Positions 37,301 to 62,456 are shown, counted from the stretch's first letter. The stretch: 64,000 bases of DNA from Schmidtea polychroa (GCA_044892525.1 CM097885.1:122574001-122638000); one strand, 5' to 3'. Numbers and translations are program-made. The notes: generated by a model from the sequence alone, not told the origin.

Positions 37301-40300
37301 GTGTAATTTGTTCCTTGTATGGGCAATTCACTTTTGTCCATTACTGAATACTTTGACCAAAAGTATTTCTGTTTAATATTAAAGTTGTATTTTGATTGCG
37401 TTTTCCAGAATGTTTCAAAAGAAGCCTTATTTTCTTTTAAAGGATTGTTCCCTTTGTCATTTATTAATGCTAGTAAAAATTCATTTTGTCCCGAAAGTTT
37501 TAAAGTTGTAGAATGTCTAAATCTTTCAAAGTAATTGAATACTTTATGATTAGTTAAAGTCATTGACGTTGAAGCTATTAAAAACTTTAAAAACGATTAT
37601 GAAAATTAAATAACTTGTACATATTAAACTAAATTCTTTATCATTCTTTTTTTCAGCCTTTATAGAAATTTGTAAACCTTTATCAAATATCTGACTGTAA
37701 GTAACACTGAATTCATCCTTTTCCATTTTAATTTTCACATTAATGTTACGTGTACCGATTCCTTTTGTTTCAATGGATCCACTTAGAACTGCTTCTATCT
37801 TTCCATATTTTACTTTTCCAGTTACTTTTTTTTCCTCAACGTCTACTATAATAATTAATTAATTAAAACCATTAAAACAATAATTTTAACTTACACTTAG
37901 CATAAATGTCTTTATTGAATAGAGATATTTCGTACTTTGAAGTTTTCTTTTCAATATCTCTTTGAAATTGGAACTTAAAAGTGTCTTTTTCCTCTCCTTT
38001 AAAAGATATTGATGCAATAAAATTAATTAATTTTTTGATTGGTTTTAAAATGTTTTGTTTCATAAATTGAAATTTAAATCCACTGAATTTTTTTAAGTTC
38101 AATTCAGCTTTTATATTTGGTAGGAATGATTCATATTTAGGTGCTATAGTAACAAAAGCACAAAGTTTAAGACCTCGTAACTCTAGGAAGGCGTCTGAAG
38201 TGCATTTTTGTAATATAGAAGAATATTTAGGTTTCGTTTCTTCCGTTTTCAAATTATGGATCAAACTCATTTCATTCCTAAATAATATTTAATTTATGAT
38301 ATGATTTTTAATTATATATCATACGAAATTGCTAGGAGTTTTTTATCATCAGGGATTTTATTAATTTCAAATTGATAATCTGTTAAAATGGTTCCATCAC
38401 CTTTCTTAAGCCCACTAATTGTTTTTAGTTTGCCTCCAAATTCTGCATCTGACGACACCATGCCATGTGATTGAATACCTACCTTTGTGCAATGAGCATT
38501 TATTTGTAATTTCCCGATCACTTGTAATGCAACGCTAAAATAAAAAAATTATAAATAATTTTAAAACAATGTAATACAGTACATATAAAATAAATATATA
38601 AAAANNNNNNNNNNNNNNNNNNNNNNNNNNNNNNNNNNNNNNNNNNNNNNNNNNNNNNNNNNNNNNNNNNNNNNNNNNNNNNNNNNNNNNNNNNNNNNNN
38701 NNNNNNNNNNNNNNNNNNNNNNNNNNNNNNNNNTTAATTTTAACAAATTATAATTAAATTTAATAAACTTAGTAAACAGGCCGTTTTTGTTTTCTTTAGT
38801 TCCTATTACCATAGACTAATGTAACTGAAGTTCTATTTAAAAAGTCACTACCGATATCATTGGTTGACAAAAGTTCATTATTTTTCTATGAAAGATATAA
38901 TAAATTTTGACTAGCATCTAGACATATTTATACAAACCAAAAACATTTCTTAATGTCTTTTGTATATATTTTCTAATATTAGTAGTTTACTGACACATTT
39001 TTAGTAAATTATTTTCTATTGACTTAAAATTTTTTTATTATTGGTATATATATATATATTTCATATTAACGAAAAGAGAATCGCCATTTTCGAAAAAGAA
39101 TAAAGCAAGTGCTTATTGATATTTGAATATTTCTTTCAAATTAGTATCATAAAGGGATTAATATCTCAATTAATATATCAATTTTATATCTGACCTAGAA
39201 ATTTAACCTTAAGAAGACCTTAAATTACCTTCGGTTCCATTAACATGGAAACGGGTGACTTAAAGTGAATAATTTTTCAAAATTGATAATAGAAATTGTT
39301 TAGATGGAATTACTAAATTGTTGATATTCATTCTACGGAGTATACAGCAAACTTGTCATATGCACTGGGCACCTTGACCAAGAGTTACTGTCATAGGAAT
39401 TTATTTATCTTTAAATTGGTATAATATTTCACCCATTTTTTCATTTTGGAGTATTCCGATGTACATTTCGACATCAATTTACAATATTATAATATTTTTA
39501 CTTTGTTCAATGTTTTAAAATTAAAACAAAATAATACAAATAATAAAAATGTCATAGATAATGTATTACAAATAACTACGATTGAAATTATTCAATTAAT
39601 ATTTATTTCAATTAAAATATGAAAATTTAAACTGTAAAATTTGCGAGGCAGTAAATGACATATGTGAGACGGAATTATATAAATATAACATTAATTATTT
39701 CCGTAAATTAAATTCGAAAAATAATTTATTTCTATTTATTGCAATTATTAACAAAACAATGCCCACCTCAATGAAACAAATTTACATGGTCATAGTTAAA
39801 AATAAAATAAATATGTAATATGAATATATTTGATAGTTGATATTTGATTATAAATGGTGGACAAACTTTTCAAGTCGAGACCCAACAACTTATTTTTTTG
39901 CAATTTAAAGTGGTACTGAAAACATTTATTTAAATTCTTTTTGAAAAAGTTTATAAGCATTAAATGACAGAAAGCGTAAAAATAAAATCTTATTCCTCTT
40001 TATGCAAATTTGGAAATTAATGTTATGTATGGTCTTGGAATTCTAAACCGAATCGTAGCTAAATAGTTGAGAGACAAACTTCTGATCAATGTCAATTAAC
40101 TTTGCATGTTTCTTTGATTAAAATGATCATTAAAGATGAGGATTTTTTTTTTAACTTACCATGTAAGAATTTTTATCACAAGTAATTTTTAAAACGGGGT
40201 ATTTTGGCAATTTAAAAATTTTTTCCAATACACACCATTTGCCCACTATTGTTTTAAGTTATCATTTTTTAAATAGATTTGATTTTCCAGAGGTTAAAGA

Positions 40301-43300
40301 GAAATGAGTTATCATTATTTAGACTTATTTAATAAATTAATTTTCAATGCTATAGGGTACAATTTCATTGTTTTAAATTGAATGACAAATTAATTTTAAA
40401 TTAATATAAATTGATTAAATTAATATAATTTTTAAAAAATATTGTCTTTACTATTTAATATTCGGAAATAATTTTTATGTTATGAAACTAAAATAATAAA
40501 ACAAAAAAATAATAATTATATATATGAGTTTCGTTTAAAGAGACTATGAAAAATCTTTGGATTACTAAATTATGTGCAAATTGAGAAATTATTTTTATTT
40601 AATAATTTTGAATTAAAACTTAATTTATAAGAAAATAATATAATTACTTGTTTTGCAAAGATACATTGATATCTCCAAGTTTTATCATACTCTTAGAACT
40701 CAAGTCTGCTGATAATGCCGATTCTATACTCAATTCAATAGGAAATCCAGTTATTGTAGAAACTGAGATTATAGCATCCAACAGTAACAAGGATTTGTCT
40801 ACTGAGAACTTCATATTTGGATTAAGAATATTCATTGTCAAATCTGATAAAATATTCGGAGAAAAATATATTTCCCGTCCCATGATTCTTGAATATATTC
40901 CTAAACTTAGCTTTTCTCCTTTATTTTCATTCTAGAAATATTTCAGTAATTTTATTATCGAATTTATTCAAAACCTTTTTATGCATTTTTAAGATTTCGG
41001 GGTGTACATTTTTATGAGGTTTAGGATTGAAATTCCCAAATAGTTTTTCTGAAATACCTTTGCTTCGAATTCCGAATTCCAAAATATTAACAGATCTTCC
41101 AAAAATATCGACAGATACATTTGTTGAAATAGAAGATGGAATTGGCGAATTGGAAAATAAAATATTTGTATCTAATTTAACGGCTGAATATCCTCTTTGA
41201 AAGGTTTTCTCTATATTTTTGGAATATGTTCGAAAATCTAGGTTAAACTTTCGAGTTAAGTCACTCATTGGTTTTGTGAATATTTGTAACATATCTCGAA
41301 GTTCAGTTTTAAAACGATCAGAGGTTTCCATGAGATTTGAAATATGACTCCAAACAAATGATCCCAACTGTTAAGGTATATTTTAAACAAAAAAAATCTT
41401 TATCCTTAATACCTGTTGATTATCTTCTTGGTTCAATCTCTGAATAATTTTTCTAAACGTTTCCCGAAATGGACATCGTATTAATGAAAGATATGCTTGA
41501 ATTCTAACTTCAGACGAATAACTAATATCATCATAAACTTTCCATAGGAAATTCTATTTGTCATTATTATATATACTAAAATATATACAAATTAAGCTTA
41601 CATCAATATCTGCGTGACAAGGAAATTGTCGTAATGCTTCCACAGCATATATCTTGACTTCATTTTGATTTACCTTTGAAGTGACACATGATTCTAGAAT
41701 TTTTATTAATTTTTTATAATCATGAAAATTTCCAGAATTTCCTAGAGCTCGTAGTGTAAATAAAATCTAAACAATTAAACAATTTTTTTTTAATATTATA
41801 TATTTAAAAAAATTATTTTACTTTTTCATTTGCTTTACTATTATCAAAATAGCAATTTTTTTCAATATATTTCACTAATTTATCCATCGCATATATGATA
41901 TCGGGATTTAGGATGCATCCAGAAGTTTTGTCACAAAAAGATTTAATCATAGAGGACAAAGTTAACAGTAGAGAATTATCAAATTTCGGATCATCAAGTT
42001 TATTCTGAATCAATTATTAATAAAAGGGGAAATAAAATTATATATAATCTACTGCAAATAATTTAATTATTGTTGGTGTTGTATTTTCAAAAAAGGAAAT
42101 TCCCAATTTTTGAAAAGTTTCCGAATTAGAATTTTCTATTAAAAATTTGAAAGCTTGTTCATTTTTGGTATGAGGCAGAGCATCGAGTAGTAAATTTCTA
42201 TGAATAATATAACATTATTTATTTAAAATAAATAAAAAATAAATAAATAATAATTGTAATTTTTTCTTTTAAAAAATTATTTTTGCAATATATTTCAATA
42301 GCTCGCCTGTCATCTCTAGGCCCTAAACTAATGTAATTATTACAAAAAAAATTGCAATGGAAATGATTGATGATGCTGAAATGAATAGAGGAGAATAATT
42401 ATGAAAAAAACTGATAAAATAAATGTTTGTTGATGCTTGTTTTGTTTCAGTTTTTTAGTTTCTATTTCTAATAATTTCAGAAATATTAGATAATCTTTTT
42501 TTAAAATATTAATAAAAGAGTTAATGTTAAATGTTTTTCATAGCCATGTAAAGTTTGTCCAGCAATAAATCTATGATGTCATTTGGTCAATGTTCCGAAT
42601 TCGTATATCATTTTCGTTGTAAACGGTTTAATGCCACATAAATAGAATATACTTTCCTTTCGAATTCGAAAGCATATCAGATAGAGTGGAAAAATTAAAA
42701 TTATAAACAATAAAATACACAAGTTGAAAATAGAAATGCTTAATTTTAAATAATATTGAGAACACATTACTAGTATGGCTTTAAATATAAAAATCATTTT
42801 ATTAAGTTACAAAAATGTTACAAAATTATATTTTATAAATGATTTTTTATTTAAATAAATTATAATAAAAAAAAATTTCAAAATTTGTGTTAATTTTGAA
42901 TTTTAAACTGTTCCAAGGAGACGTAAATGTTCATTAATAATTTTGCAAAGTTTTATTAATTAGTAGGTAATTTTATTTGTCCTGTCATAAAACAATTATT
43001 CCAGTTTTATATTGATGATATCAAAAAGGTTCATGACAGTTAAAAGGGGAAAATATGTTTTAGAATAAATCTCCTTAACTGACTAGCAGCTTAAGGTTGA
43101 GGGAACATTTAATTATTTATAAAGAAATATCAAGTATTCGGAAAAAAGAAAGATGTCAACAATAGAAGTTCAAGCAAAAAAGACCCAAAAACGTCAAATT
43201 GAATGGGTGTTTTTAATAGTAAACTTAGAGATAAGTCAAGTTTTGTCATTAGAGTTATCCGAAAATTACTATACCTTTATTAATTAATTTATAAATATTT

Positions 43301-46085: not shown

Positions 46086-46302
46086 CACTAGATTTATGGG
46101 TAATAATAGCCGTAAAAATAGGTATACCTAATTCGACATGCGAAATGAGGTAGTCGGTAGAAGAGAGTATTTAATATTTACCTATATTTCATGACGTATC
46201 TAAAATCCAATATATGTATTCAAAAAATAATAAATCAGTATTACATATATGTAGCAATAGAATTTTAAATGAGTCAAATTGACTCAGTCCGTAAATCTAG
46301 TG
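46086..46302. mobile_element. piggyBac-type MITE, copy 2 (same family as 8304-8508)
   Basis: CACTAGATTTA...GTAAATCTAGTG|TTAA, with an internal sequence shared with copy 1. Confidence 0.8.
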
Positions 46303-46913
46303 TTAATAATATATAGGTATTATGATTTAAATAAAGAATAAATGTTCATTGTTTTTACTTATTTTTAGAAAAAAATAGCCTAGCAATGTCAAATTTAAAG
46401 ATTTAAAGCTTAATTGTCAAATTGACAGTGAATAAATGCTTTTAGACATCGAATAAAAACTTTAAAATAAATATATTTTAACAATAAAATTATTATTCAG
46501 TCTTCTATCTATTATAAAATTGTATTTATGCATGGAAAATTTAATAAATCAAAAGCAAAAACAAAACGTAAGAAGTTTGCTTTTAGAAAAAATGTAAATA
46601 CTGACATAAAATTATTGAAGATTTTTATGAGTCTGTTGGGTCACATTAAAGACTTTTCTGAGCAGTAAGTTGGACACCCGTGGTTTAAAGAAATCTATTA
46701 AATAAATGTCAAAGAATCATTGCGATAAAATTAAAAATTATTTGTAGCTTCTGGTTTGCTTGTTTATGCTTGGGATCATTTTTCAAGAATCCTTCTTTCA
46801 CATAACTTTGTATTTGATGATGAAACACTATCGAAAGCAACATTTTATGACATAATAGTCATTTTAAATGAAATGCACAAAGATTACCGTTGCTATTCCA
46901 CATTTCTTTGATA

Positions 46914-50350: not shown

Positions 50351-53300
50351 TCAAAGAAAACAAAAACATATAATAAGCATGGAAAAATATTCATGGATTT
50401 TCACTAAATTCACTAACAAATTATTTATTGAAAATTTGGGTAAAGATTTTTTCTTTTCGTTAAACAACGTGGTGTTTTTCTTTTTTAGATATTTACAAAA
50501 AAATTTCCTTTAGTAATAAATGAAAATTATTTCACATCCTTTTATTATTTTACCTTTTCATAATATCCCTGTAGGATAACAGTAAATAATACTTAGAATT
50601 TTCTTAGAATTGATTAGAAGATTTTATGATTTAACTCAAACTCAAATTCAATTACAAAAAAACGTTCATAGGAGCATTTATGTCAACCGAAGCTGCTAAA
50701 TTATATGAAGGATTCAATGAAGTAATTGACAGTTATGAAGAAAGAATCAGAAAAGCCTTCGAAGAACCTTCAAATTTAGGAAGAGATTTAAATTAAGCTA
50801 TCCGTTACAAAAAAGGTAATGAATAAATTCAAGACTTTTTAGAACCATTGATCGATTGTAGAAAATGTCTTAAGACACGAATTATCGAAAGAGAAATTAA
50901 CTGCCTTTAACGGAGATAAAGATATAAAAAGATAAATCAGGATGAGAAATATTTCTAATGTAAATGAGATTAAAGAGATCATTATGATGATAGAAGAAAT
51001 TAAGAAAGAAATGAAAAATGAAGAGATTGCGGCTATGAAACCATTCAAAAGAAGTTATGCAAATGTGGTTCAGAATCGGAGCCAATATCTAGCTCAACTA
51101 CTACCACGACAACAACAACAACAAAGATTTCGAGAAAGCCTACCACACAGAGAACCATTTAGAAACTATAATAGAATTGTAGATCAAAGGACAATCAATT
51201 CAGGCATCACAAAATAGATCGGATTTTTCAAATTTATCTGATCAGTCAAATCGAAGATATGAACAACCACGATCAAAACAAAGTTGGGGATGCAAAGAAG
51301 TAGAACACATAAGAACTCAATGTCCGAACCTAAAATGTTCCCATTGCAAGACAGGCCATTTTAAATTTTAATGCTTCAATTTAAGAGAATTTCAAAGCTA
51401 AAGATATCAACAGAATATAGCAGTGATTGCAAACTAAGAAGACGACGAGAATCTGAGATCCGACAGTGAATACCCAAATGCCAACGTTCCAACACAGGAG
51501 GAAGTGATTAGAGCGGTAAACTAAATGTAAGAAAGATCTTGAGCAATGATTGTATGTATAAGAATGTTTGTAATTGTTTGCATGAAATTGAATTTTTTGA
51601 CAATATTTGGTATGATGATTGTGGTATGCTTGATGTTATATGTAGATAAAATACTGTAGATAAAATAGATATCGATATTGACAATAAAGTATGCACTTTA
51701 AATAATGATTATGATAAGGTAATAAAATACGATAAAATGGGGGAGAGTAGTTTCAGTATGAATGTCTTGATTAATAATAAGAAATTTAATTGGCTTTTGG
51801 ATACGAGAGCCATGATAAGTGTCATTCGTAAAGAAGTACTAAACGCGCTCGAAAACGTAAAAGTTGAAAATGAGAGCTCATTAGATTTTATTAAAAATAA
51901 AAATTTTAAATCAAGAAAATAAAGTTGATTTCTTTATCGCAAATGAAATTTCACCAAGTGTATTAGGAGGAATTAATATGTTAGATCAATTTAATATTGC
52001 ACTTGTAATGAACCCACAAAAAGAAAATATTTTAATGTTGGGTGATAGAAAACCAAGTAATTTAAAAAATAATGATCAAATTAGTCGAGAATAAAATAAT
52101 TAAAGAATATGAAAATATATTTATGAAACATAAATGGGATTTAGACAAAACAAATTTAGTAAAACATGATATATTAAAAAAAGGTGAACCTATTTTTATT
52201 AAGCCTAAACGTCAACCATTTCATCTTACTGAGAAAGTTGAAAAAATATTAAGGATATGGAGGAAAATGGAATAATAAGTCAATGTGAGTCTCCGTTGAA
52301 CTCACCTTTAGTGTGTGTTAAAAAGAAAGATAAAGATGATATTAGGATATGTTTAGATTATAGAGCGTTAAATGGGGTGACATTTCTCATTCCGAATACT
52401 CAAGAAATGTTAGATATTTTGTATGGCGCCAAATATTTTACCATCCTTGATTTAGGAAATTCTTATTTATAAGTTGAGCTACAAGATGAATCTAGATTAA
52501 TAACAGCATTTTCCACTGATAATACTCAATTTTGTTTTAATCGCATGCATTTTGGCATGGCAGTTGTGCCTGCAGCATTTCAAAAGCTCATGAATAAAGT
52601 ATTAGGACCACTGAATAGTAAAGAAGTTGTTGTTTATCTTGACGATATATTAATATTTTCGTCTTACTTGCTAGAACACTATAAGAGAATAAGAAAAGTA
52701 TTTCAAAGAATAAGTGATTCTGGGTTAAAGATTAAACCAGAAAAATGTTATTTTATTAAAAATGAGATAAAACTTTTAGGGCCTGTCATAAACGATGAAG
52801 GAATACACACTTCTAACAACAAAATTATTGCGATTAAAAATTTCGAAACCCAAAAATATGTTAAAAAAGTACGAAGTTTTCTTGGATTAACAAATTATTA
52901 TCGTTGATTTATAAAAAATTATAGTATGTATTCAAAATCGCTTGAAAATTTGTGCTGGGTAAATCAGACAAAAATTATGTAGACAAATGAATGTGAAGAT
53001 ACCTTTCAAGAATTAAAGAAAGCATTAGTAAGGGCTCCAATTCTTGTATTACAAAGGAATTTATTTTGGACACAGATGCCAGTTTCAACAGAATTAGAGC
53101 AGTTTTATCACAATTAGATGAAAATGGCAAAGAAAAAGTAATTGCATATGGTTCGCAAGCAATGAGCAAACACGAAGTAGGTTATTGTATCACTCGGAAA
53201 GAATTATTAGCCATAATTTATTTTACCGAACATTTCAAACATTATTTATATGGTAAAAGGTTTAAACTAAGGAAGACCATAAGGCAATAAAGTTTATGTT

Positions 53301-54906
53301 GAAGACCAAGAAGCCAATCACACCTCAATTTCAAACATGGATCAACCAATTAAGGTCTGGACATTGAAATGGAATATTGTAAAGGTGAAACGCATTCTAA
53401 TGCAAATGCACTATCGTGAACTGAATGCAATATGTACATACTATGTCAAACGATTCACGAAGAACTAAAAACAGGAAAACTAAAAACAAAGATTTTAGCA
53501 CGCATGTGTGATAAGATGGAAAATTGTGCCAACAAGATTCTAAAGAAATAGAAAAGATCAAAAAGATATACTAATCGGGAAAGAAACAAAATTGACAGAA
53601 AATAATGACATTATTCATTCAAGTAAAGATAAAATATTGATTCCATACGAACGAAAAGTAGAATTTGTTTTGTACACCAATAAAATTTTGTGTCATGTTG
53701 CACTAAATAAAGTCCACGAATATATTTTTAGGAAATTTGACATAAGAAACAGACAAGAATTTATTAAAGAAGTAGTCGGATCGTGTGAAAATTGTCAATA
53801 AAGAAAGGTTATGACTACACGAAAAAACAGAGAAACTAATTAAACCAACAGAGGTTTATTTATTCGAATCAATTTTATTGACTTTTGTGACCCAATAAAA
53901 AACTGCTAGGAGTGGAAAGAAGTATATTTTGACAATTAAAGACTAATTTAGTAAATATATTTCTTTATTTGGAGTTTCAGGGCAAGATGAAAAGACAGTT
54001 TCAACAATTATTAACGAAAAATGGATTTTGAAATTTGGTGCTCCAAGGATTATTCATTGTGATAGAGGAAAAGCATTTGAGTCAGCTTTATAAAAAGCAT
54101 TTGCAGAGAAACATGGGATTAATGTAGTATATTCAAATCTGTATAATCATTCAGCTAATGAACAAACTTAACAACAATTTAGAACTATTAGAGATGCCAA
54201 CCAAATTTCCTTTAAAAAAGAACGGGCAAAGAGTCGAAATACTTTCTGAAGTTGAATTTATGTTGAATGCAACAATTCAGAAATATACTCAGTTGAATCC
54301 TGCACAAATTGTTTTGGGAAAAAGATTGCCAGAGAATGGTATGAAAATGAAGAGCCATATAAACTACAATTATTAATGAAAAGCGTAAATCAGAAAGATT
54401 AACGTTACTAAAACGAATAAAAGGAAATAAGGACGATAAATTATATTTCAGTGAAGAAGAGCAAATCGAATTTTCAATGTCGGGGATGTTGTATTGGTAA
54501 AATGACTGTTTCGACCAGTCAGAGGGGGATTGCCTCTGGCTGGCGTTTATTTGGCTTTTTTCTATCGCGTCTGTGTGCGCGGTCTGGTTAGACCGATTCT
54601 TGTTGGTGTGCGCACACAGACGCGAGAAGTAGGTTTTGATTTTTTGTACAATGTGATTTATGAATTGATTTTTTAGGGTTTTAATAGAAATTCTGTAATT
54701 TTGGTGGAAATTAGATTTTGGTTTGATTTGTTTTAAACGGAATTATTGGTGGAGTTTTTAAATGGATATTTTGGAAGAAATAAGTTTGGTTTAAAATGGT
54801 TGGATTTTTTGAATGAAATTGGAATTTCGAAATTGGAATTAACATTTTGAAAAAGTTTAAAATGGAACGTGAAAGAATATCGAAATCGGAAATGGATCCA
54901 GAACCT

Positions 54907-55017
54907 GCAGATGCTTATGCGGAAAGTTGCATAAGCACAATTGGAGTTGACTTTGAAATCAGAACTACTGAATTAGATGATGAAACTATAAAATTGCAAA
55001 TATGGGACCCAGCTGGT
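54907..55017 (+). pseudogene. RAB1: Captured Rab1/Ypt1-type GTPase fragment (switch I to G3); duplicate at 58826-58936
   Basis: [37 protein letters not shown] versus the Rab1 consensus [38 protein letters not shown]. Lacks the P-loop and C-terminus. Confidence 0.9.
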
Positions 55018-55451
55018 CTATTCGAGATTAAATTAATTGGAGATGAATATTTCACTTTTATCACTGAATGTAAAGATCCCAAAGCATGCTCGATTTTGTT
55101 GAGAGGTAGCGCAAAGATGTTTTGAATGAAATTGAGAGAAATCTTGGCGATGCTATGTCAGTTGCTAGAAACGTTATGATGGAAAATACTCTCGTTCCTG
55201 GTGGAGGAGCATTGGAAATGGCTCTATCAACTCACTTGACTCTTAAAGCACAAAATATCGTTGGAGTACGACAAAACGCTTATCTGGCTGTTGCTAATGC
55301 GTTGGAAGTTATTCCAAGAACTTTGGCCCAGAATTGCGGTGCTAAGGTGTTGAGGTTGATTACGGAATTGAGAGCAAAGCACGCTAATAATCCGGCTAAT
55401 AATTGGAGTATCGGTGTTGATGGAGAGGAGGGAGTGATTGTCGACATGAAA
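55012..55451 (+). pseudogene. CCT3: Captured chaperonin TCP-1 gamma fragment with a 1-nt frameshift near 55110; duplicate at 58931-59370
   Basis: [32 protein letters not shown] / [58 protein letters not shown]. The IGDEYFTFI and CKDPKAC motifs are CCT3-diagnostic. Confidence 0.92.
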
Positions 55452-56771
55452 ATCAATCGTCGTATGATTTTTGCTGCTTTAAACTCTGACGGTGAAATGG
55501 AAATGACATTATTAAATAATAAAATTCTAATGCGTTATTCTGATCTGAAACATGGTAGCAGAGCGTGGTTCCGGCTAGCCAGCCGGAACAAGGTATTATT
55601 GATATTTTTTATTAATGATATTTGTATGTATTATATTTTATTTTCATGTGATAATTTTGAAACATTTCCCCTAGGGCCTGCCCTCCCTAACCCCATTAGA
55701 GGTGGATTGGCGCGGGTATTTGTCAAAATAATAACAGGGAAGACAATTACTCTCGAAGTTGAATCTAGTGACACGATAGAAAATGTTAAAGCGAAAATAC
55801 AAGATAAAGAGGGTAGTCCACCTGACCAGCAACGATTAATTTGCGCGGGAAAACAATTAGAAGATGAGCGAACATTATTTGATTATAATATTCAAAAGGA
55901 GTCTACTTTGCATTTAGTTTTGCGATTGAGGGGTGGAATGCAAATATTCGTGAAGACATTGACTGGAAAAACAATAACTTTGGAAGTAGAATCAAGTGAT
56001 ACTATTGAGAATGTAAAGGCTAAAATTCAAGAAAAAGAAGGGATACGCCCAGGGCGACAAAGACTTAATTTTGCCGGGAAAGTATTAAAAGATGGCTTAA
56101 CGTTATTAGATTATAACGTTAGGAAAGAAGCCACGGTACATCTGGTTTTGGGTCTGGCAGGGGGAAGACCAGTATCAGATGCGGAGTTCGAGGCAGGTTA
56201 CAAGAGACGAACCGGGTGGAAGATTTCGTTAGGGCGTCTAAGTAACCGGGCCTTAGGAGATGGATCGGACCCTGGGGAAGATCAAAGGAGAATGGAGGCA
56301 TACGAAGATAAGTATGAGGAAGTGATAAACGAATTTGAGGAGCTGAGGAATAATACTCGGGAGTTAGGGCGGGAGAAAGAAGAAAAGGAAATTGAGGCAG
56401 ATCTGAAACGGTTAGAAGCGGACTTCAGCAGAATCGGTGATCTGGTCCTCACGCAGAAGGAAGAGAGTTTTAGAGTGGAGTCGCGGAAGGGCACAGAAAA
56501 ATCATTTAGGAGCGAAGAGCCCAATGAGAAACAGAAGTGCATAATGGGTTTGAAACCCTTGCAGCTGCCGATCTTTAATGGAAAGGTAATGGAATATCCT
56601 GGATGGAGGGCAATTGTGAGAGCCAGCATCGAGGACACGGATGAGCCGAGTGAGAGAAAGTACTTGTACCTGAGACAGTACTTGGAAGGGAAGCCGCTGC
56701 AATTAATTGCCTATATTGGATATGGCTCGCAGGCTTTCGAGGCGGCGATGAAATTACTTGATGAAAGGTAA
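55122..56771 (+). CDS. Chimeric ORF: CCT3 fragment - linker - ubiquitin 1 (55716-55937) - ubiquitin 2 (55938-56165) - coiled coil - BEL/Pao-type Gag (DUF1759-like from ~56550); Gag continues in the same frame after TAA 56769-56771 to ~57100
   Basis: Ub1 [33 protein letters not shown]...LRLRGG. Ub2 [11 protein letters not shown]...LVLGLAGG. Gag [47 protein letters not shown]. First in-frame ATG at 55155. Expression unknown. Confidence 0.8.
55553..55570 (+). other. Primer-binding site complementary to the 3' end of initiator tRNA-Met
   Basis: TGGTAGCAGAGCGTGGTT directly after the 5' LTR. TGGTAGCAGAG is the reverse complement of the conserved iMet 3' end CUCUGCUACCA. Confidence 0.85.
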
Positions 56772-57169
56772 GGGGGACCAGAAAGATCCTATTCCATGAT
56801 GCTGGATGCGGCGCAGAGGTTCTTCCCAGTGAGGCTCAACGTCTTGGAGGACCTAGAGCGGTTTGTAGAGCTTCTAGGAAACCTCATCCTGAATTTCAAG
56901 GATCAGAAGAGGGAAGGCGAGTTGAACAACGGAATGTTGTATCACCAACTGCTGAAGAAGCTGCCAGAGACCATGCTGATTCAGTGGTCACGCCATTGTG
57001 ATTCGGGAAGAGAGGGAAATGTACAAACGCTAGCCAAGTGGATCAAAACAGAAGCCGATAGGCATCGAAAAGCCTTGAATATATTGTTTGGGGAGAGAAC
57101 TCCAGGGAGTAGGAAGGATGTGGGGACATTGAAAAAGTTCACAAACTTCATGGAGAGAAAACCAATTGC

Positions 57170-58384
57170 AAGAAATCAAGCTTCAAGATGTTCGCATTTG
57201 GCTCAGAGTTATTTTGCAGTAACGGAAATGTTAAATGACGAGTTACATGCAGTTCGGGGAATTGAAGGCACAAAACTCGACAGGAGTAAGTCATCTAATG
57301 AAGAGCAAGGAGCTCAGAGTCATTTAGATAGGCAAATACCCAATTCTGGGGATACTAACGAATTAATTAACGGCATTGCAATCAGACAAAATTTCTTTGA
57401 GAATAACGAAATAGATTCCATAGATGTAATAAATCCTTCCGATTCAAAAAATGATTCAGATATCGAAAGTAATGAAGATGAAAATGACGAAGAAATGGAT
57501 TATATTAAAGAATGTGATGAAAATGATGAAACACATGAAAACAAAAATGCTAGCGAAGATGGAGAGAGTGAAAGCAATGAATGTGATAAGTCACAATCTA
57601 ACGATATTATAAATCAAGATGAAATAGAGCAAAATCGAGTCAATGAGAACGAGAATAATTATGCTGAATTTGTAAAAATAATACGGAACTATTAGATAAA
57701 GATGTTGATAAAGGAGACCAAGTTACAGCAGATGAATTAGAAAATATTGTCAAAAGTCACAATCAAGAAGAAAATTTTGAAAGTAAACATAATGAAACTG
57801 AAGTAGATGTGTCAGACAAGAATGAAAATCATAATAGTCATGTAGGCACAGATGTTGTCGACATTAATGTTATCGAAAGACCGAATTCTTGGGTAGTAGA
57901 TAATTTTCAAAACATGGAAGACGTAGTTAATGTTCAAGCGGATTCTGCTGCCTCAGAAAATCGTTTAGAAACTGATCGAATTATGCCAGATTCTGAGAGC
58001 AATGACAGTGATCTTAGAGTCGATATTGGTAAAGATCATACATCCGACACAGCGAAAGATTCTGAACAAAATACATTCACTCAACCAACGTCTGCTTTAG
58101 ATGATATCCTTGAAGACTATTCACCTGGTTCCCCTTCATTAAATGAAATGCAACAGGGAAAAGTGGGGACTATTGAATTGGCGAAACATGCAGGAAGGTT
58201 AATGGAGATATTGCAGCGAAACAGAATGAAAAGTGGCAGGGGCTTGGTCGAGTATGGCGATGGTGGGAGGAGAATCCACCATGATGTATCCAGAAAGGTG
58301 CGTGGTGCGGCGGCCTATACCATAGCCAGATGGGTGTGTGAGAGGTATTGGAGAGAGGCCAAAAGAAAGGTTCCCCTGAAGTAA
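57170..58384 (+). CDS. D/E/N/S-rich low-complexity ORF occupying the pol position, with a probable frameshift at ~57675-57695
   Basis: ORFs 56796-57695 and 57809-58384. The acidic composition continues across the frame change. No catalytic motifs. Confidence 0.5.
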
Positions 58385-58402
58385 TTGGTGATTGATCCGC
58401 TA

Positions 58403-58425
58403 GAAGGGATCAAGGAGGGGGGAAA
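58403..58425 (+). other. Polypurine tract
   Basis: GAAGGGATCAAGGAGGGGGGAAA abutting the 3' LTR TG. Confidence 0.85.
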
Positions 58426-59471
58426 TGTTTCGACCAGTCAGAGGGGGATTGCCTCTGGCTGGCGTTTATTTGGCTTTTTTCTATCGCGTCTGTGTGCGCG
58501 GTCTGGTTAGACCGATTCTTGTTGGTGTGCGCACACAGACGCGAGAAGTAGGTTTTGATTTTTTGTACAATGTGATTTATGAATTGATTTTTTAGGGTTT
58601 TAATAGAAATTCTGTAATTTTGGTGGAAATTAGATTTTGGTTTGATTTGTTTTAAACGGAATTATTGGTGGGGTTTTTAAATGGATATTTTGGAAGAAAT
58701 AAGTTTGGTTTAAAATGGTTGGATTTTTTGAATGAAATTGGAATTTCGAAATTGGAATTAACATTTTGAAAAAGTTTAAAATGGAACGTGAAAGAATATC
58801 GAAATCGGAAATGGATCCAGAACCTGCAGATGCTTATGCGGAAAGTTGCATAAGCACAATTGGAGTTGACTTTGAAATCAGAACTACTGAATTAGATGAT
58901 GAAACTATAAAATTGCAAATATGGGACCCAGCTGGTCTATTCGAGATTAAATTAATTGGAGATGAATATTTCACTTTTATCACTGAATGTAAAGATCCCA
59001 AAGCATGCTCGATTTTGTTGAGAGGCAGCGCAAAGATGTTTTGAATGAAATTGAGAGAAATCCTGGCGATGCTATGTCAGTTGCTAGAAACGTTATGATG
59101 GAAAATACTCTCGTTCCTGGTGGAGGAGCATTGGAAATGGCTCTATCAACTCACTTGACTCTTAAAGCACAAAATATCGTTGGAGTACGACAAAACGCTT
59201 ATCTGGCTGTTGCTAATGCGTTGGAAGTTATTCCAAGAACTTTGGCCCAGAATTGCGGTGCTAAGGTGTTGAGGTTGATTACGGAATTGAGAGCAAAGCA
59301 CGCTAATAATCCGGCTAATAATTGGAGTATCGGTGTTGATGGAGAGGAGGGAGTGATTGTCGACATGAAAATCAATCGTCGTATGATTTTTGCTGCTTTA
59401 AACTCTGACGGTGAAATGGAAATGACATTATTAAATAATAAAATTCTAATGCGTTATTCTGATCTGAAACA
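58426..59471 (+). repeat. 3' LTR (1,046 bp) with the second copy of the Rab1/CCT3 fragments
   Basis: Direct repeat of 54507-55552, followed by TSD ATGAC. Confidence 0.95.
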
Positions 59472-60003
59472 ATGACATATGGCAAATAAAAATGAAGACA
59501 TATTTCAGGTTCCAGATAAAATAATAAAGAAGTTACTTGACAGAAGTTTCAATATCGAATTTCAGAATTGAAAATGTAAAATTAGAAATGTGGAATAGAT
59601 CAAACTAGGTTTTATCAGTTTTTAAAAACCGGTTTTTTTAGAAATAAAGATCAGTTTTAAATGTATGCATAACATTAATGTATTTATACAAGGCCGGATT
59701 AAGCAATTTTAGTGCCCAAGGAAAAGCCCACGTGGGCGGCCCCTAATCTTTCACTGACCGTAACCGTTGGTACGTTCAATATTTTTTCGTTAGAGTCAGG
59801 ATTATAGCATGGTGAGTCCTCATGGTCCGCATTTCAGTCATTACCATTTACCCGTAGTTTTTAAAATTTTTAATGCGCTTAATTTTTCAGCATACAAGAT
59901 TGTACCAAATAATTTATACCAATTTATACCCACATATTATCTGCCACTCCGAGATCAGCATGTGTGTAATTATGAAAATATTTGATTGTTTGTGCATGCA
60001 CAC

Positions 60004-60450
60004 ACCAAACACCACTGAGATACATTCTCTATAGTGGTGGTTAGTGTGTAAAGCAATTTACTCACCAATTTATTTACCAATTAATCATCTTTATCAATTT
60101 ACATTTACTGATTTCCTCATCATGAATGTATTTTGGAAATTTATTTTAGACATTTTAGAAAAGACTTTCAGGTAAGATATTTAATTTTAAGTAAACTTTA
60201 AGGCTTGAATTTTCATTAAAAATATATTTTTAAAAATTTTCAGCGATCTTATTTTATCTAAAAGTTGTCTGAAATAAAGTTATTATAGAAACGTATCTCA
60301 GCGATGCATTTCTACAAATCAAAAGTTTGTGTGTTTTTAGTATATGTTGTGCTTGTGTGCAGTTATTATATTTTTTCCACTTTTCAGATTTCTATAGTAT
60401 AAGATGTATCTCACTGAACTATAAATGAGAAATTCAACGTGAAATCAAAA
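60004..60450 (+). repeat. Dispersed repeat: uninterrupted copy of the Tc1-like 5' region that is split at 9410-11180
   Basis: ACCAAACACCACTGAGATAC..TCTATAGTGGTGG and GAAACGTATCTCAGCG..GTATAAGATGTATCTCA are shared in reverse complement with 11030-11180 and 9410-9620. Confidence 0.75.
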
Positions 60451-60456
60451 TATGTT

Positions 60457-62456
60457 CATGGGCGTCCGGAAGGGGGAGAACCTGCCCCCCCCCACTGGAT
60501 TTTCCAAACCATTCTATTTTTCGATTATTTGTTCCGCTATGCTTGGTTAAGCTACTACTCATCCTGGCTGAGTTATTCAGTTCGTTTAAAAGGAGCATTT
60601 TACATACTTTTTCCCCAGCCAATAAATCGTGGTTTTCAAGGTGCCTTTTATCACAGGGCCTTTTACGAAATATAAATATTTTTATAAAAGTACCAAAAGT
60701 CACCAATGAAGTGCGTGGCATAAAAATGCATTGGTTTGAGCTGCAAAGTTCTTGCAATTAGGGGAAAAGCCAGAATTGAACATTGTTTGTCTAATGGACA
60801 GTGCTCTAATGCGTCAAGTAGAAGAAAATAGGAAAAAATTGGATCCGATTTTATAAAGTATTTTGTTCTGTGGAGCAACTGACATAGCATTGAGAGGAAA
60901 AACAAGTGCAAGTGCAAATCCGCAAAGCCTCTACGATTTCAGGATTGAAGCTGTAGAAGAAGTACTCAAAAATCATTTGGAAACTTCACCAGCCAATGCA
61001 AGATACACATATGTGCGTGTAGAATATGAACTAATCAAGTTGACTGAAGAAGCCATAAGGGAAGAAATTGTTTCAATGGCCAATAAATCCATTGAATTTT
61101 CAATCATTGGAGATGAGAGTGCTGACATATCTGGAAAAGAACGAATTTCCATAGGAATTCGTTTTGTGAATTCTTTTAGCACATAAACTGTTATTCATGA
61201 AGAATTCCTTGGATTTGCAAAACTGGATCATTTTGAAGCTACATCCATAGCTGATAAAATCATTGATCAGTGCACAAAATTTGGATTAAACCTTGACAAA
61301 ATGTATGGCCAAGGCTAGGCAAAGAAGGTGGCGTTCAGGCAAAAATTAGGAGCAAATACCCTAAAGCTGTTTTTGTGCATTGTGCATCACATCGACTTAA
61401 TCTTGTGATCAATGATCTCAATGCTGTACCAAATGTTAGGAATACAATAGGAACAATTAAGAGCATCATTAGATTTTTTTGAGAAAACCCAAAGATAAGA
61501 AGTCTGATTCCAAATGTTCCCATGCTTTGTGAAACACGTTGGTCTGCAAAATACAAAAGCATCAGACTTTTTGCTGCAAGTTTTGAAGACATTTTTGATC
61601 AGCTGAGTTACAGTGTGCTTCAAGTACAACAAGTATTCTAATTTGTCTTCAAATCATCACTTACTACTCCTCAAAATTAGAGTCAGTAGCACAAGCCCTA
61701 CAATCAACACAATTAAACATTCTGAAAGTTTTTGACCACGTCCAAGAGCTCCTAAAAATTTTCCACACTCAGACAAAATGCCGACGAGTTTTTTAAGACC
61801 ACTATTTCTCAAAGTGAGAAATTGGCAGAACAATTAAACATCCAGTTTAAGAGGCAAACACACCGTTCGAATAATGGTGGTTCAACTGTTGAAGAATACT
61901 TTCGAAGATCTTCCTTTATAACATAATTGGATTCAATCATCTCATCGTTGGAGAGCAGATTCAAATGACAATAACAAAATAAATTTTAGTCTTTTTTCAC
62001 TTCACCCAGTGCAAATGTTGAAACTTTCAAAAGATGAATTCAAAACTCACACAGAAAACATCATAATGGAGTATCAAATTGAAAACTTTGTTGCTGAGGC
62101 AAGAACTTGGTTTGAGATATGGTCAAATAAAAAATCGGATTTTGAAATCAAAAGTCGCGATGAAATGATGGATTTATTACAATTCACAGACCTTTTTCCA
62201 GCTATTAAGAAAGTAGTTCTTATTGCTTTAACTTTGCCAGTGTCAACTTGCACGATTGAAAGACCATTTAGCACACAGAAGAGTCAAAACGTCGCTAAGG
62301 TCAAAAATGTGTAAAAATAGACTTTCTGGACTTTGCTTGATGAGTGTTCATCGTGACAGAATCAATGACAGTAAGAAAAAGCGAAAAATAATGGACAAAT
62401 TGATCAATAAATTTGGTCAAGATCACAGACGTTTGCAGTTTCTTTTCAAAAAGTAA
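60457..62456 (+). mobile_element. Decayed hAT (Tip100/ZMYM1-like, DUF4371 plus hAT dimerisation domain) transposon
   Basis: Left end CATGGGCGTCCGGAAGGG. Motifs FCGATDIALRG, FSIIGDESADISGKERISIGIRFV, VFVHCASHRLNL, CETRWS, TLPVSTCTIERPFS and RLSGLCLMSVH. Stops and frameshifts. Right TIR not found. Confidence 0.85.

What the first reader, a model, noticed from the sequence alone, without database searches (positions are those of the whole stretch)
54507..59471. Young, intact-ended non-autonomous LTR retroelement carrying pieces of three housekeeping genes (Rab1, CCT3, polyubiquitin)
Seen: 1,046-bp TG..CA LTRs with only 3 visible differences (~99.7% identical), a perfect 5-bp TSD, an iMet PBS and a PPT, but no RT, RNase H or integrase. 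Fragments of three unrelated highly expressed genes sit in the LTRs and in front of gag. Known: LTR elements capture mRNA fragments by template switching during reverse transcription, and pol-less elements can be mobilised in trans. Inference: this chimera was reverse-transcribed and integrated as a unit recently, so it may be an active gene-capturing family. I do not recognise this combination from any described element.
Basis: partly seen in the sequence, partly recalled or inferred. Interest (0 to 1): 0.9.

Follow-up and report, generated by a model that had tools for sequence, protein, structure and literature searches.

The report
Gag-only BEL/Pao retroelement with ubiquitin-gag
This is a real, recently inserted, pol-less LTR retrotransposon of the BEL/Pao group with Rab1 and CCT3 scraps in its LTRs, but the ubiquitin in front of its gag is a module it shares with distant relatives, including a fully equipped one, so it is a notable variant of a known kind of element and not a new kind of gene-capturing machine.

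Summary
There are two 1,046-bp TG..CA LTRs with 3 mismatches and a perfect 5-bp duplication (ATGAC). A tRNA-Met primer binding site follows LTR1 and a purine tract precedes LTR2. There is no RT, RNase H or integrase inside. Both LTRs carry a Rab1 piece (36 aa) fused to a CCT3 piece (about 145 aa), and two ubiquitin units lie in front of a BEL/Pao-type gag (DUF1759).

Ubiquitin is not private cargo. Three relatives from metagenomes, only about 30% identical in gag, also carry a ubiquitin-like domain ending in GG between the primer binding site and gag. One of them (L052) is a complete autonomous BEL/Pao element. In L052, as in the window, the reading frame opens in the LTR and runs through the primer binding site into ubiquitin and gag. 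Only the Rab1 and CCT3 pieces look private to this element.

The insertion is young. The ubiquitin and Rab1 pieces have already drifted from their near-invariant parents, so their capture came earlier. The age of the CCT3 piece cannot be judged. Precedents exist: Bs1 of maize and the gag-only TR-GAG elements. Family copy number, the autonomous partner and the host species could not be determined here. Interest is moderate.

The parts
54502..54506 (+). Left target-site duplication, ATGAC
   Evidence: Read directly; identical to 59472-59476.
54507..55552 (+). 5' LTR, 1,046 bp, TG..CA. It has a G+C-rich start, then an AT-rich stretch with no recognisable content (to about 54860), then the Rab1-CCT3 hybrid segment, then a 100-bp tail
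   Evidence: Local alignment with LTR2: 1,046 bp, 3 mismatches, no gaps; sequence.
54910..55017 (+). Rab1-derived piece (36 aa, switch I to the G3 motif), in frame with the start of the CCT3 piece. The same piece lies in LTR2 at 58829-58936
   Evidence: Pfam Ras E 2e-8. Best PDB matches are Rab1A/1B, 28 of 36 identical, with normally invariant residues changed.
55012..55451 (+). CCT3 (TCP-1 gamma) piece, about 145 aa of the apical/intermediate region, uninterrupted by introns and read in two frames (one frameshift, present in both LTRs). The same piece lies in LTR2 at 58931-59370. The Rab1 and CCT3 alignments overlap at a shared Ala-Gly
   Evidence: Pfam Cpn60_TCP1 profile 311-454, E 2e-26. 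PDB CCT gamma E 1e-14. Best database matches are flatworm CCT3 at 66-73%.
55553..55570 (+). Primer binding site for tRNA-Met, 18 nt, directly abutting the LTR
   Evidence: First 12 nt are identical to a published tRNA-Met PBS. All 18 nt are identical in relative L002 and in seven other loci that have a related gag downstream.
55571..55709 (+). Leader, open in the same frame as the CCT3 piece upstream and ubiquitin downstream. Its end reads like the RGG tail of a further, truncated ubiquitin unit
   Evidence: Over the 84 codons from the end of the CCT3 piece, across the LTR end and PBS, to ubiquitin: 0 stops in this frame, 9 and 13 in the other two, P(open) = 0.002 by shuffling; sequence.
55710..56165 (+). 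Two head-to-tail ubiquitin units (polyubiquitin-derived); the second ends in GG immediately before gag
   Evidence: Pfam ubiquitin E 7e-55. Unit 1 has 10 of 76 differences from canonical ubiquitin. Unit 2 has 2 of 34 in its first part and 14 of 42 in the part next to gag (Fisher p = 0.003).
56166..57692 (+). gag: coiled-coil stretch, DUF1759 capsid-like domain, then an acidic low-complexity tail with no zinc knuckles. It is broken by one in-frame stop and has no frameshift
   Evidence: Weak direct DUF1759 hit, E 0.03. 136 HMMER hits, best E 1e-11 at 37% identity, and the long hits are BEL/Pao polyproteins. The N part hits 73 and the C part 141 of 147 relatives, in collinear positions.
57809..58381 (+). 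ORF3, 191 codons in another frame, origin unknown
   Evidence: Open far beyond chance. No match in Pfam, in the relatives' proteins or in their polyproteins by blastx at E <= 10.
58402..58425 (+). Polypurine tract, ending at the LTR2 boundary (unbroken purine run 58412-58425)
   Evidence: Read directly.
58426..59471 (+). 3' LTR, 1,046 bp, with the same Rab1-CCT3 segment
59472..59476 (+). Right target-site duplication, ATGAC
51650..54090 (+). Neighbour, not part of the element: decayed Ty3/Gypsy-type pol (protease, RT, RNase H, integrase). The element inserted about 400 bp downstream of it
   Evidence: Pfam RVT_1 4e-21, RT_RNaseH 8e-23, zf-H2C2, rve 6e-4. There is no purine tract in front of LTR1, so LTR1 is not this element's 3' LTR.
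60857..62311 (+). Neighbour: hAT transposase remnant
   Evidence: Pfam DUF4371, DUF659, Dimer_Tnp_hAT.

Best explanation
The element is a gag-only, non-autonomous derivative of a BEL/Pao lineage. That lineage primes on tRNA-Met and places a ubiquitin module ending in GG between the primer binding site and gag.

Shown:
- The ends, PBS and PPT are intact, and the TSD is perfect.
- All of pol and the zinc-knuckle part of gag are missing.
- Gag carries one in-frame stop.
- A frame opens in the CCT3 piece of the LTR and stays open through the LTR end, PBS, leader and both ubiquitin units into gag.
- An autonomous relative (L052) has the same order: ORF in the LTR, PBS, ubiquitin-like domain, gag, pol.

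Inferred:
- The copy was reverse-transcribed and integrated recently, using RT and integrase supplied by an autonomous relative elsewhere in the genome.
- The Rab1-CCT3 segment entered an ancestor's LTR by template switching onto co-packaged host mRNAs (the two pieces meet at a shared Ala-Gly), and was then copied into both LTRs at the next round.
- The near-canonical two-unit ubiquitin came from host polyubiquitin mRNA. Either it was a fresh capture, or it overwrote an older element-borne ubiquitin-like domain to which that mRNA is homologous.
- The ubiquitin module works as a cleavage site. Host deubiquitinases would cut after GG and free Gag from whatever peptide the LTR and leader encode, which is why that upstream peptide can be swapped for host scraps without harm.
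For: Structure:
- LTRs, TSD, PBS and PPT.
- No pol.
- BEL/Pao gag.

Ubiquitin-gag in relatives:
- P0278/L001 and P0299/L002 carry ubiquitin plus DUF1759 in one ORF.
- L052 has, in one 2,168-codon frame: ubiquitin aa 287-352 (E 3e-9), DUF1759, RVT_1, Peptidase_A17, rve, DUF5641.
- The GG end is kept in all four element-borne domains, although L052's domain is only 24% identical to ubiquitin.

Shared ends:
- The same 18-nt PBS occurs in L002 and in seven more loci with a related gag. Their LTRs end in ..AACA plus a 0-5 nt spacer.

Frame open through the PBS:
- Window: P = 0.002.
- L052: P = 0.0004 upstream of the PBS and 0.0002 between the PBS and ubiquitin.
- The ubiquitin-less relatives L109 and L110 have stops upstream, and their ORF starts after the PBS.

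Gag similarity:
- The three ubiquitin-bearing relatives are the three best matches to the window's gag N part. They sit next to the window on basal branches in both gag trees.

Timing:
- Both LTRs carry the same Rab1-CCT3 segment with the same frameshift.
- The ubiquitin and Rab1 pieces are decayed while the LTRs differ by 0.3%.
Against: - No second copy and no autonomous partner were seen. The best gag relative anywhere is only 37% identical, so mobilisation in trans is inferred from structure alone.
- Bootstrap support for a single ubiquitin-bearing clade is weak: 0.04 for the gag N part, where a 5'-truncated protein of unknown ubiquitin status intrudes, and 0.39 for the C part.
- Each ubiquitin-like domain is closer to canonical ubiquitin than to the others. 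That fits one old gain, but equally several independent gains.
- In the gag C part the ubiquitin-bearing relatives are not the best matches.
- In L001 and L002 there are stops, and no ATG, shortly upstream of ubiquitin, so an ORF that starts in the LTR is not universal.
- The second unit in the window ends LAGG, not RGG, which may cleave poorly.
- Cleavage by deubiquitinases is untested.
- The U3/R/U5 limits are unknown, so it is not known whether the CCT3 piece is transcribed from the 5' LTR.
Confidence: 0.72

Rival explanations
1. A young family that actively captures host mRNAs picked up three unrelated housekeeping-gene pieces (Rab1, CCT3, polyubiquitin) as chance cargo, shortly before this insertion.
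For: All three pieces are host-derived and intron-free. The window's ubiquitin is much closer to canonical ubiquitin (79-87%) than the relatives' domains are (24-58%). It has the head-to-tail layout of polyubiquitin mRNA, so it was taken from a host gene later than theirs. The CCT3 piece is no more diverged from flatworm CCT3 than flatworm classes are from each other, so it could be fairly fresh.
Against: A ubiquitin-like domain occupies the same slot in three relatives, including an autonomous one. Chance cargo would not land in the same place and keep its GG end. The ubiquitin and Rab1 pieces carry many changes at normally invariant positions while the LTRs differ by 0.3%. No other copy with different cargo was seen.
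Confidence: 0.15
2. Horizontal arrival. The element, with its Rab1 and CCT3 pieces, came from another species, so the pieces derive from a former host.
For: The element's G+C (0.35-0.41) is well above that of its surroundings (0.20-0.30). No CCT3 in the database is more than 73% identical over the piece. No ORF of the element or of the neighbouring host gene is on record anywhere.
Against: Coding-derived sequence is normally richer in G+C than AT-rich intergenic DNA. The host's own genes could not be compared, so the lack of a close CCT3 may only mean that the host is absent from the collections.
Confidence: 0.08
3. Assembly artefact, or a segmental duplication that only mimics an LTR element.
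For: Near-identical 1-kb repeats 3.9 kb apart are a classic place for mis-joins. The window has seven N runs, though none is near the element.
Against: TG..CA ends, a perfect TSD, a PBS abutting one repeat and a purine tract abutting the other are not expected from mis-assembly or duplication. Relatives show the same PBS and LTR-end motif.
Confidence: 0.04

Closest known systems
Bs1 of maize (pol-less LTR retroelement with transduced pieces of three host genes)
   Same: A non-autonomous LTR element. Pieces of three unrelated cellular genes, none full length, joined with element sequence into a hybrid open reading frame (PMC13317346).
   Different: Bs1 is a plant element with its cargo in the internal region. 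Here two of the pieces sit in the LTRs, the host is an AT-rich animal genome, and the third piece (ubiquitin) is shared with relatives and so is not private cargo.
TR-GAG elements (terminal-repeat retrotransposons with a GAG domain)
   Same: LTRs plus a single gag-type coding region, no pol, and shown to transpose with proteins supplied by relatives (PMC8704663).
   Different: TR-GAG elements were described in plants and derive from Copia or Gypsy families. Here the gag is BEL/Pao-type, carries one stop and lacks zinc knuckles.
Autonomous BEL/Pao elements (e.g. Sinbad of Schistosoma, PMC554778), and the environmental relatives L052 and L109
   Same: DUF1759 gag. Relatives carry Pao peptidase, RT, integrase and DUF5641. 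They share the tRNA-Met PBS and the ..AACA LTR end.
   Different: The window element has no pol at all. A ubiquitin module before gag is not mentioned in the BEL/Pao literature I could search.
Host ubiquitin sequences taken up by pestivirus genomes through RNA recombination
   Same: Host ubiquitin-coding RNA is recombined into a polyprotein-coding genome, in one or two copies, independently in unrelated lineages and at a few permissive sites (PMC13517609). By established knowledge of ubiquitin fusions, cleavage after GG is done by host enzymes.
   Different: That is an RNA virus with no reverse transcription, and there the insertion changes the processing of a non-structural protein. This is an analogy of principle only.
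Ty1 of yeast (from my own knowledge, not tested here)
   Same: The gag ORF starts inside the 5' LTR and the tRNA-Met primer binding site lies within the coding sequence.
   Different: Ty1 belongs to a different superfamily (Copia) and has no ubiquitin module.

Membership tests
LTR retrotransposon | Two direct long terminal repeats with TG..CA ends | tested here: met
   1,046 bp each, 99.7% identical; ends read.
LTR retrotransposon | Target-site duplication of 4-6 bp | tested here: met
   ATGAC on both sides.
LTR retrotransposon | tRNA primer binding site next to the 5' LTR and a polypurine tract next to the 3' LTR | tested here: met
   The PBS is identical to a published tRNA-Met PBS; purine tract.
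BEL/Pao (Belpaoviridae) | Gag with the DUF1759 capsid-like domain | tested here: met
   The direct Pfam hit is below threshold (E 0.03). Both gag pieces match, collinearly, polyproteins that carry DUF1759 plus Pao peptidase.
BEL/Pao (Belpaoviridae) | Pol with Pao-type peptidase (A17), RT, RNase H and integrase | tested here: not met
   None is present in the 2.9-kb internal region. The element can only be a non-autonomous derivative.
TR-GAG type non-autonomous element | LTRs enclosing a gag coding region only | tested here: met
   Gag is the only element-type domain. It carries one in-frame stop, so it is not intact in this copy.
TR-GAG type non-autonomous element | An autonomous partner family with related LTRs, PBS and gag in the same genome | not testable with these tools
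   The host assembly is not available. The only pol in the window is Gypsy-type. Relatives with the same PBS exist only in environmental contigs.
Gene-capturing LTR element (Bs1-like) | Intron-free pieces of cellular genes inside the element, copied with it | tested here: met
   Rab1, CCT3 and ubiquitin pieces. The Rab1 and CCT3 pieces are identical in both LTRs.
Gene-capturing LTR element (Bs1-like) | Parent genes present in the same genome with introns at the corresponding places | not testable with these tools
   The host's genes are not available.
Ubiquitin-gag BEL/Pao group (proposed here) | A ubiquitin-fold domain ending in GG between the tRNA-Met PBS and DUF1759 gag, in one reading frame | tested here: met
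   Window; L001 and L002; L052.
Ubiquitin-gag BEL/Pao group (proposed here) | The members form one clade | tested here: inconclusive
   They are neighbours on basal branches in both gag trees, but bootstrap support is 0.04 and 0.39. One intruding sequence has unknown ubiquitin status.

The most novel reading that the evidence does not exclude
A lineage of BEL/Pao retroelements has made host ubiquitin part of its own gene plan. The coding frame opens in the LTR, passes the primer binding site, and a ubiquitin domain with a conserved GG end lets host deubiquitinases cut Gag (or Gag-Pol) free of the leader peptide. Because the module is homologous to abundant polyubiquitin mRNA, it is from time to time re-sampled from the host by template switching. 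Because the peptide upstream of it is disposable, host scraps such as CCT3 can settle in the LTR. This would be a retroelement counterpart of ubiquitin-fusion processing in cellular genes and of ubiquitin uptake by pestiviruses.
Probability: 0.3. Interest if true: 0.7.

Novelty: new variant of a known kind. Interest (0 to 1): 0.5.

Why it matters
Gene-fragment capture by LTR elements is well documented in plants but poorly so in animals, and pieces sitting inside the LTRs are unusual. More interesting is the side result. A ubiquitin module with a conserved GG end recurs between the primer binding site and gag in several BEL/Pao elements, including an autonomous one. In two of them it goes with a reading frame that starts in the LTR. 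If that holds, it shows a retroelement using a host processing system in place of its own protease to define the Gag N-terminus. It would also give a concrete example of how a captured host sequence turns from cargo into a working part.

Tried and rejected
Searches that failed or found nothing:
- The whole chimeric ORF against the 5.8-billion protein set was swamped by polyubiquitins.
- The gag N part against the same set found nothing within the length filter.
- Exact look-ups of the gag C piece, ORF3 and the neighbouring 1,412-codon host exon found nothing on record, so the host stayed unidentified.
- tRNA and Rfam scans of the window were empty.
- Scans with a gag alignment of metagenome and viral contigs confirmed nothing, because the patterns fell in the coiled coil.
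- My first ubiquitin comparison used a register shifted by one residue and is void. One search replaces it.

Ideas rejected:
- LTR1 as the 3' LTR of the upstream Gypsy-type pol. There is no purine tract in front of it, that pol is of another superfamily, and the TSD brackets the 4,965-bp unit.
- The 71% ceiling of the CCT3 piece as proof of old age. Cestode and trematode CCT3 are just as far from each other.
- ORF3 as a leftover of the pol C-terminus. There is no similarity at E <= 10.
- The more diverged half of ubiquitin unit 2 as a remnant of the relatives' ubiquitin-like domain. It is still closer to canonical ubiquitin (28 of 42) than to theirs (17-18 of 42).

- My notes and tool references carry ORF bounds, and one search printed the three LTR mismatch positions. 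From these, the place of the gag stop and of a stop difference between the LTRs can be inferred.
- The 'canonical ubiquitin' used for counting is a natural host unit taken from the polyubiquitin hits. It is not a consensus of any element.


Full report
1. Observation

The feature is real and lies at the stated coordinates.
- A local alignment gives two direct repeats, 54507-55552 and 58426-59471. Each is 1,046 bp, with 3 mismatches and no gaps (the repeat finder had capped them at 300 nt).
- They begin TG and end CA, and ATGAC flanks the unit on both sides.
- TGGTAGCAGAGC follows LTR1 directly. It occurs once in the window, against 0.04 expected. It is the same 12-mer described as the tRNA-Met primer binding site of the GalEa1 and CoRex1 elements (PMC3587641).
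- A purine-rich tract ends exactly at LTR2.
- The unit is richer in G+C (0.35-0.41) than its AT-rich surroundings (0.20-0.30).
- No other copy or LTR fragment is in the window.

2. Content

LTR cargo:
- In each LTR, Pfam finds a Ras-family piece fused in frame to a Cpn60_TCP1 piece, which continues in a second frame.
- Against solved structures, the first piece is closest to Rab1A/1B: 28 of 36 residues identical, E 5e-13, against 2e-10 for Rab8.
- The second piece is closest to CCT gamma.
- The two alignments overlap at a shared Ala-Gly. That is what template switching at a microhomology would leave, but this is inference because the parent genes are not at hand.

Internal region:
- After the PBS come two head-to-tail ubiquitin units (E 7e-55).
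- Then comes a coiled-coil stretch and a weak match to the first half of DUF1759, the BEL/Pao gag family (E 0.03).
- No RT, RNase H, integrase or protease domain is present.
- Gag is broken by one in-frame stop and lacks zinc knuckles.
- A last ORF of 191 codons, open far beyond chance, matches nothing.

3. Surroundings

- Upstream, on the same strand, lies a decayed Ty3/Gypsy-type pol (protease, RT, RNase H, integrase).
- Downstream lies a hAT remnant.
- LTR1 is not the 3' LTR of the upstream element. No purine tract precedes it, and the TSD brackets the 4,965-bp unit.
- The minus strand at 29-42 kb holds a large lipid-transfer-protein gene.

4. Gag relatives

- An exhaustive HMMER search of 1.84 billion representative proteins with the gag C piece gave 136 hits. 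None was closer than 37% identity.
- The long hits are BEL/Pao polyproteins with DUF1759, DUF1758 or Peptidase_A17, RVT_1, integrase and DUF5641.
- Named sources include bivalves and a jellyfish.
- The two gag pieces, compared separately, match adjacent stretches of these proteins. The superfamily assignment therefore holds, and the family itself is not represented in the collections.

5. The turn: ubiquitin is shared

- Comparing each piece of the element with the 147 retrieved proteins showed that two of them, P0278 and P0299, start with a ubiquitin unit followed by the same gag.
- Their contigs (L001, L002) read as one frame: a ubiquitin-like domain ending in RGG, a coiled coil, then DUF1759. 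In L001 this continues into zinc knuckles and a protease-like region.
- L002 carries the window's PBS, identical over 18 nt, at its 5' end.
- Scanning metagenome contigs for that 18-mer gave at least 120 stretches. Eight loci, L002 among them, have a related gag 200-900 nt downstream. Their LTRs end in ..AACA plus a spacer of 0-5 nt, as in the window.
- One of these, L052, is a complete autonomous element. A single 2,168-codon frame holds a ubiquitin domain (aa 287-352, E 3e-9), DUF1759, RT, Pao peptidase, integrase and DUF5641.
- Two others, L109 (complete, with a terminal repeat) and L110, have no ubiquitin.

6. Reading frame through the PBS

- In the window, the 84 codons between the CCT3 piece and ubiquitin span the LTR end and the PBS. 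They have no stop in the ORF frame, against 9 and 13 in the other frames (P = 0.002).
- In L052 the frame is likewise open for 135 codons upstream of the PBS (P = 0.0004) and for 150 codons between the PBS and ubiquitin (P = 0.0002).
- In the ubiquitin-less L109 and L110 the ORF starts after the PBS and the upstream frame has stops.
- L001 and L002 have stops shortly upstream of ubiquitin, so the link is not universal.

7. Ubiquitin comparisons (one search is void because of a register error)

- Unit 1 differs from canonical ubiquitin at 10 of 76 residues.
- Unit 2 differs at 2 of 34 in its first part and 14 of 42 in the part next to gag (Fisher p = 0.003).
- The domains of L001, L002 and L052 are 55%, 58% and 24% identical to ubiquitin. 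All four element-borne domains end in GG.
- Each is closer to ubiquitin than to the others. This fits a single old gain followed by divergence, or repeated gains.
- In the gag trees the ubiquitin-bearing elements are neighbours on basal branches, and they are the three best matches of the gag N part. Support for a single split is weak, 0.04 and 0.39, partly because a 5'-truncated sequence intrudes. Its contig begins with the codons GG and cannot be scored for ubiquitin.

8. Age

- The LTRs differ by 0.29%, so the insertion is young. With unknown host rates I put it at very roughly 10^5 to 10^6 years, which is inference.
- The ubiquitin and Rab1 pieces have many changes at positions that are otherwise near-invariant, so those captures came earlier.
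- The CCT3 piece cannot be dated. Its 66-73% identity to cestode and trematode CCT3 equals the identity of those two groups to each other. That fits a source in a third, unsampled flatworm-like lineage.
- The host was not identified.

9. Mechanism, and how sure each step is

- Shown: the anatomy, the superfamily, the lack of pol, the shared PBS, LTR end and ubiquitin-gag layout, and the open frames.
- Inferred with good confidence: retrotransposition as a unit (both LTRs carry the same cargo with the same frameshift) and dependence on enzymes from another element.
- Inferred with moderate confidence: the ubiquitin module is a functional, inherited or repeatedly selected part of this lineage.
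- Speculative: host deubiquitinases cut after GG to free Gag from an LTR-encoded leader peptide, and the module is re-sampled from polyubiquitin mRNA.

10. Comparison with the known

- Bs1 of maize already shows a pol-less LTR element with pieces of three host genes in a hybrid ORF (PMC13317346).
- TR-GAG elements show that gag-only elements transpose (PMC8704663).
- Pestiviruses show recurrent, independent uptake of one or two ubiquitin copies into a polyprotein (PMC13517609).
- I found no description of a ubiquitin domain in front of a BEL/Pao gag. That corpus is limited, and Repbase and Dfam could not be searched.

11. Verdict

The element is a new variant of a known kind and of moderate interest, mainly for the ubiquitin-gag module and not for the gene captures.

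Noticed in passing
L052 (JGI contig Ga0209893_1000166, 7,284 bp; stored in reverse orientation): A complete autonomous BEL/Pao element. Its single 2,168-codon frame starts upstream of the tRNA-Met PBS and contains a ubiquitin-like domain (24% identical to ubiquitin, ending in GG) before gag. There are 60-bp tandem repeats in the part upstream of the PBS.
   Followed up: partly
L001 1-120 and L002 1-380: In both ubiquitin-gag relatives there is no ATG between the last upstream stop and the ubiquitin-like domain, which itself starts with Ile instead of Met. Where translation starts is unclear.
   Followed up: no
window 57809-58381 (+): A 191-codon ORF at the 3' end of the internal region, open far beyond chance. 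It has no similarity to anything searched, including the relatives' polyproteins.
   Followed up: partly
window 29000-42000 (-): A large host gene with a 1,412-codon open exon (30876-35111) and a vitellogenin open-beta-sheet domain piece (40930-41367). It is probably a large lipid transfer protein. It has no sequence match among solved structures and no exact record in the collections.
   Followed up: partly
window 51650-54090 (+): A decayed Ty3/Gypsy-type pol (protease, RT, RNase H, integrase) with several breaks. The finding is inserted about 400 bp downstream of its integrase core.
   Followed up: partly
window 60857-62311 (+): A hAT transposase remnant (DUF4371, DUF659, hAT dimerisation domain).
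   Followed up: no
window 10299-10634 (+); 9383-9623 vs 60209-60448; 8319-8512 vs 46113-46306: A DDE_3 (Tc1/mariner-like) transposase piece, and two short dispersed repeat pairs (87% inverted, 93% direct), presumably other transposon families.
   Followed up: no
L003-L122 (metagenome contigs with the 18-nt PBS): 113 of the 121 contigs that carry the same 18-nt tRNA-Met PBS have no related gag nearby, so this PBS is shared with other kinds of retroelements.
   Followed up: no
L123 1-6: The contig of gag relative P0245 begins with the codons Gly-Gly right before its gag leader. This could be the end of a ubiquitin domain cut off by the contig end.
   Followed up: partly
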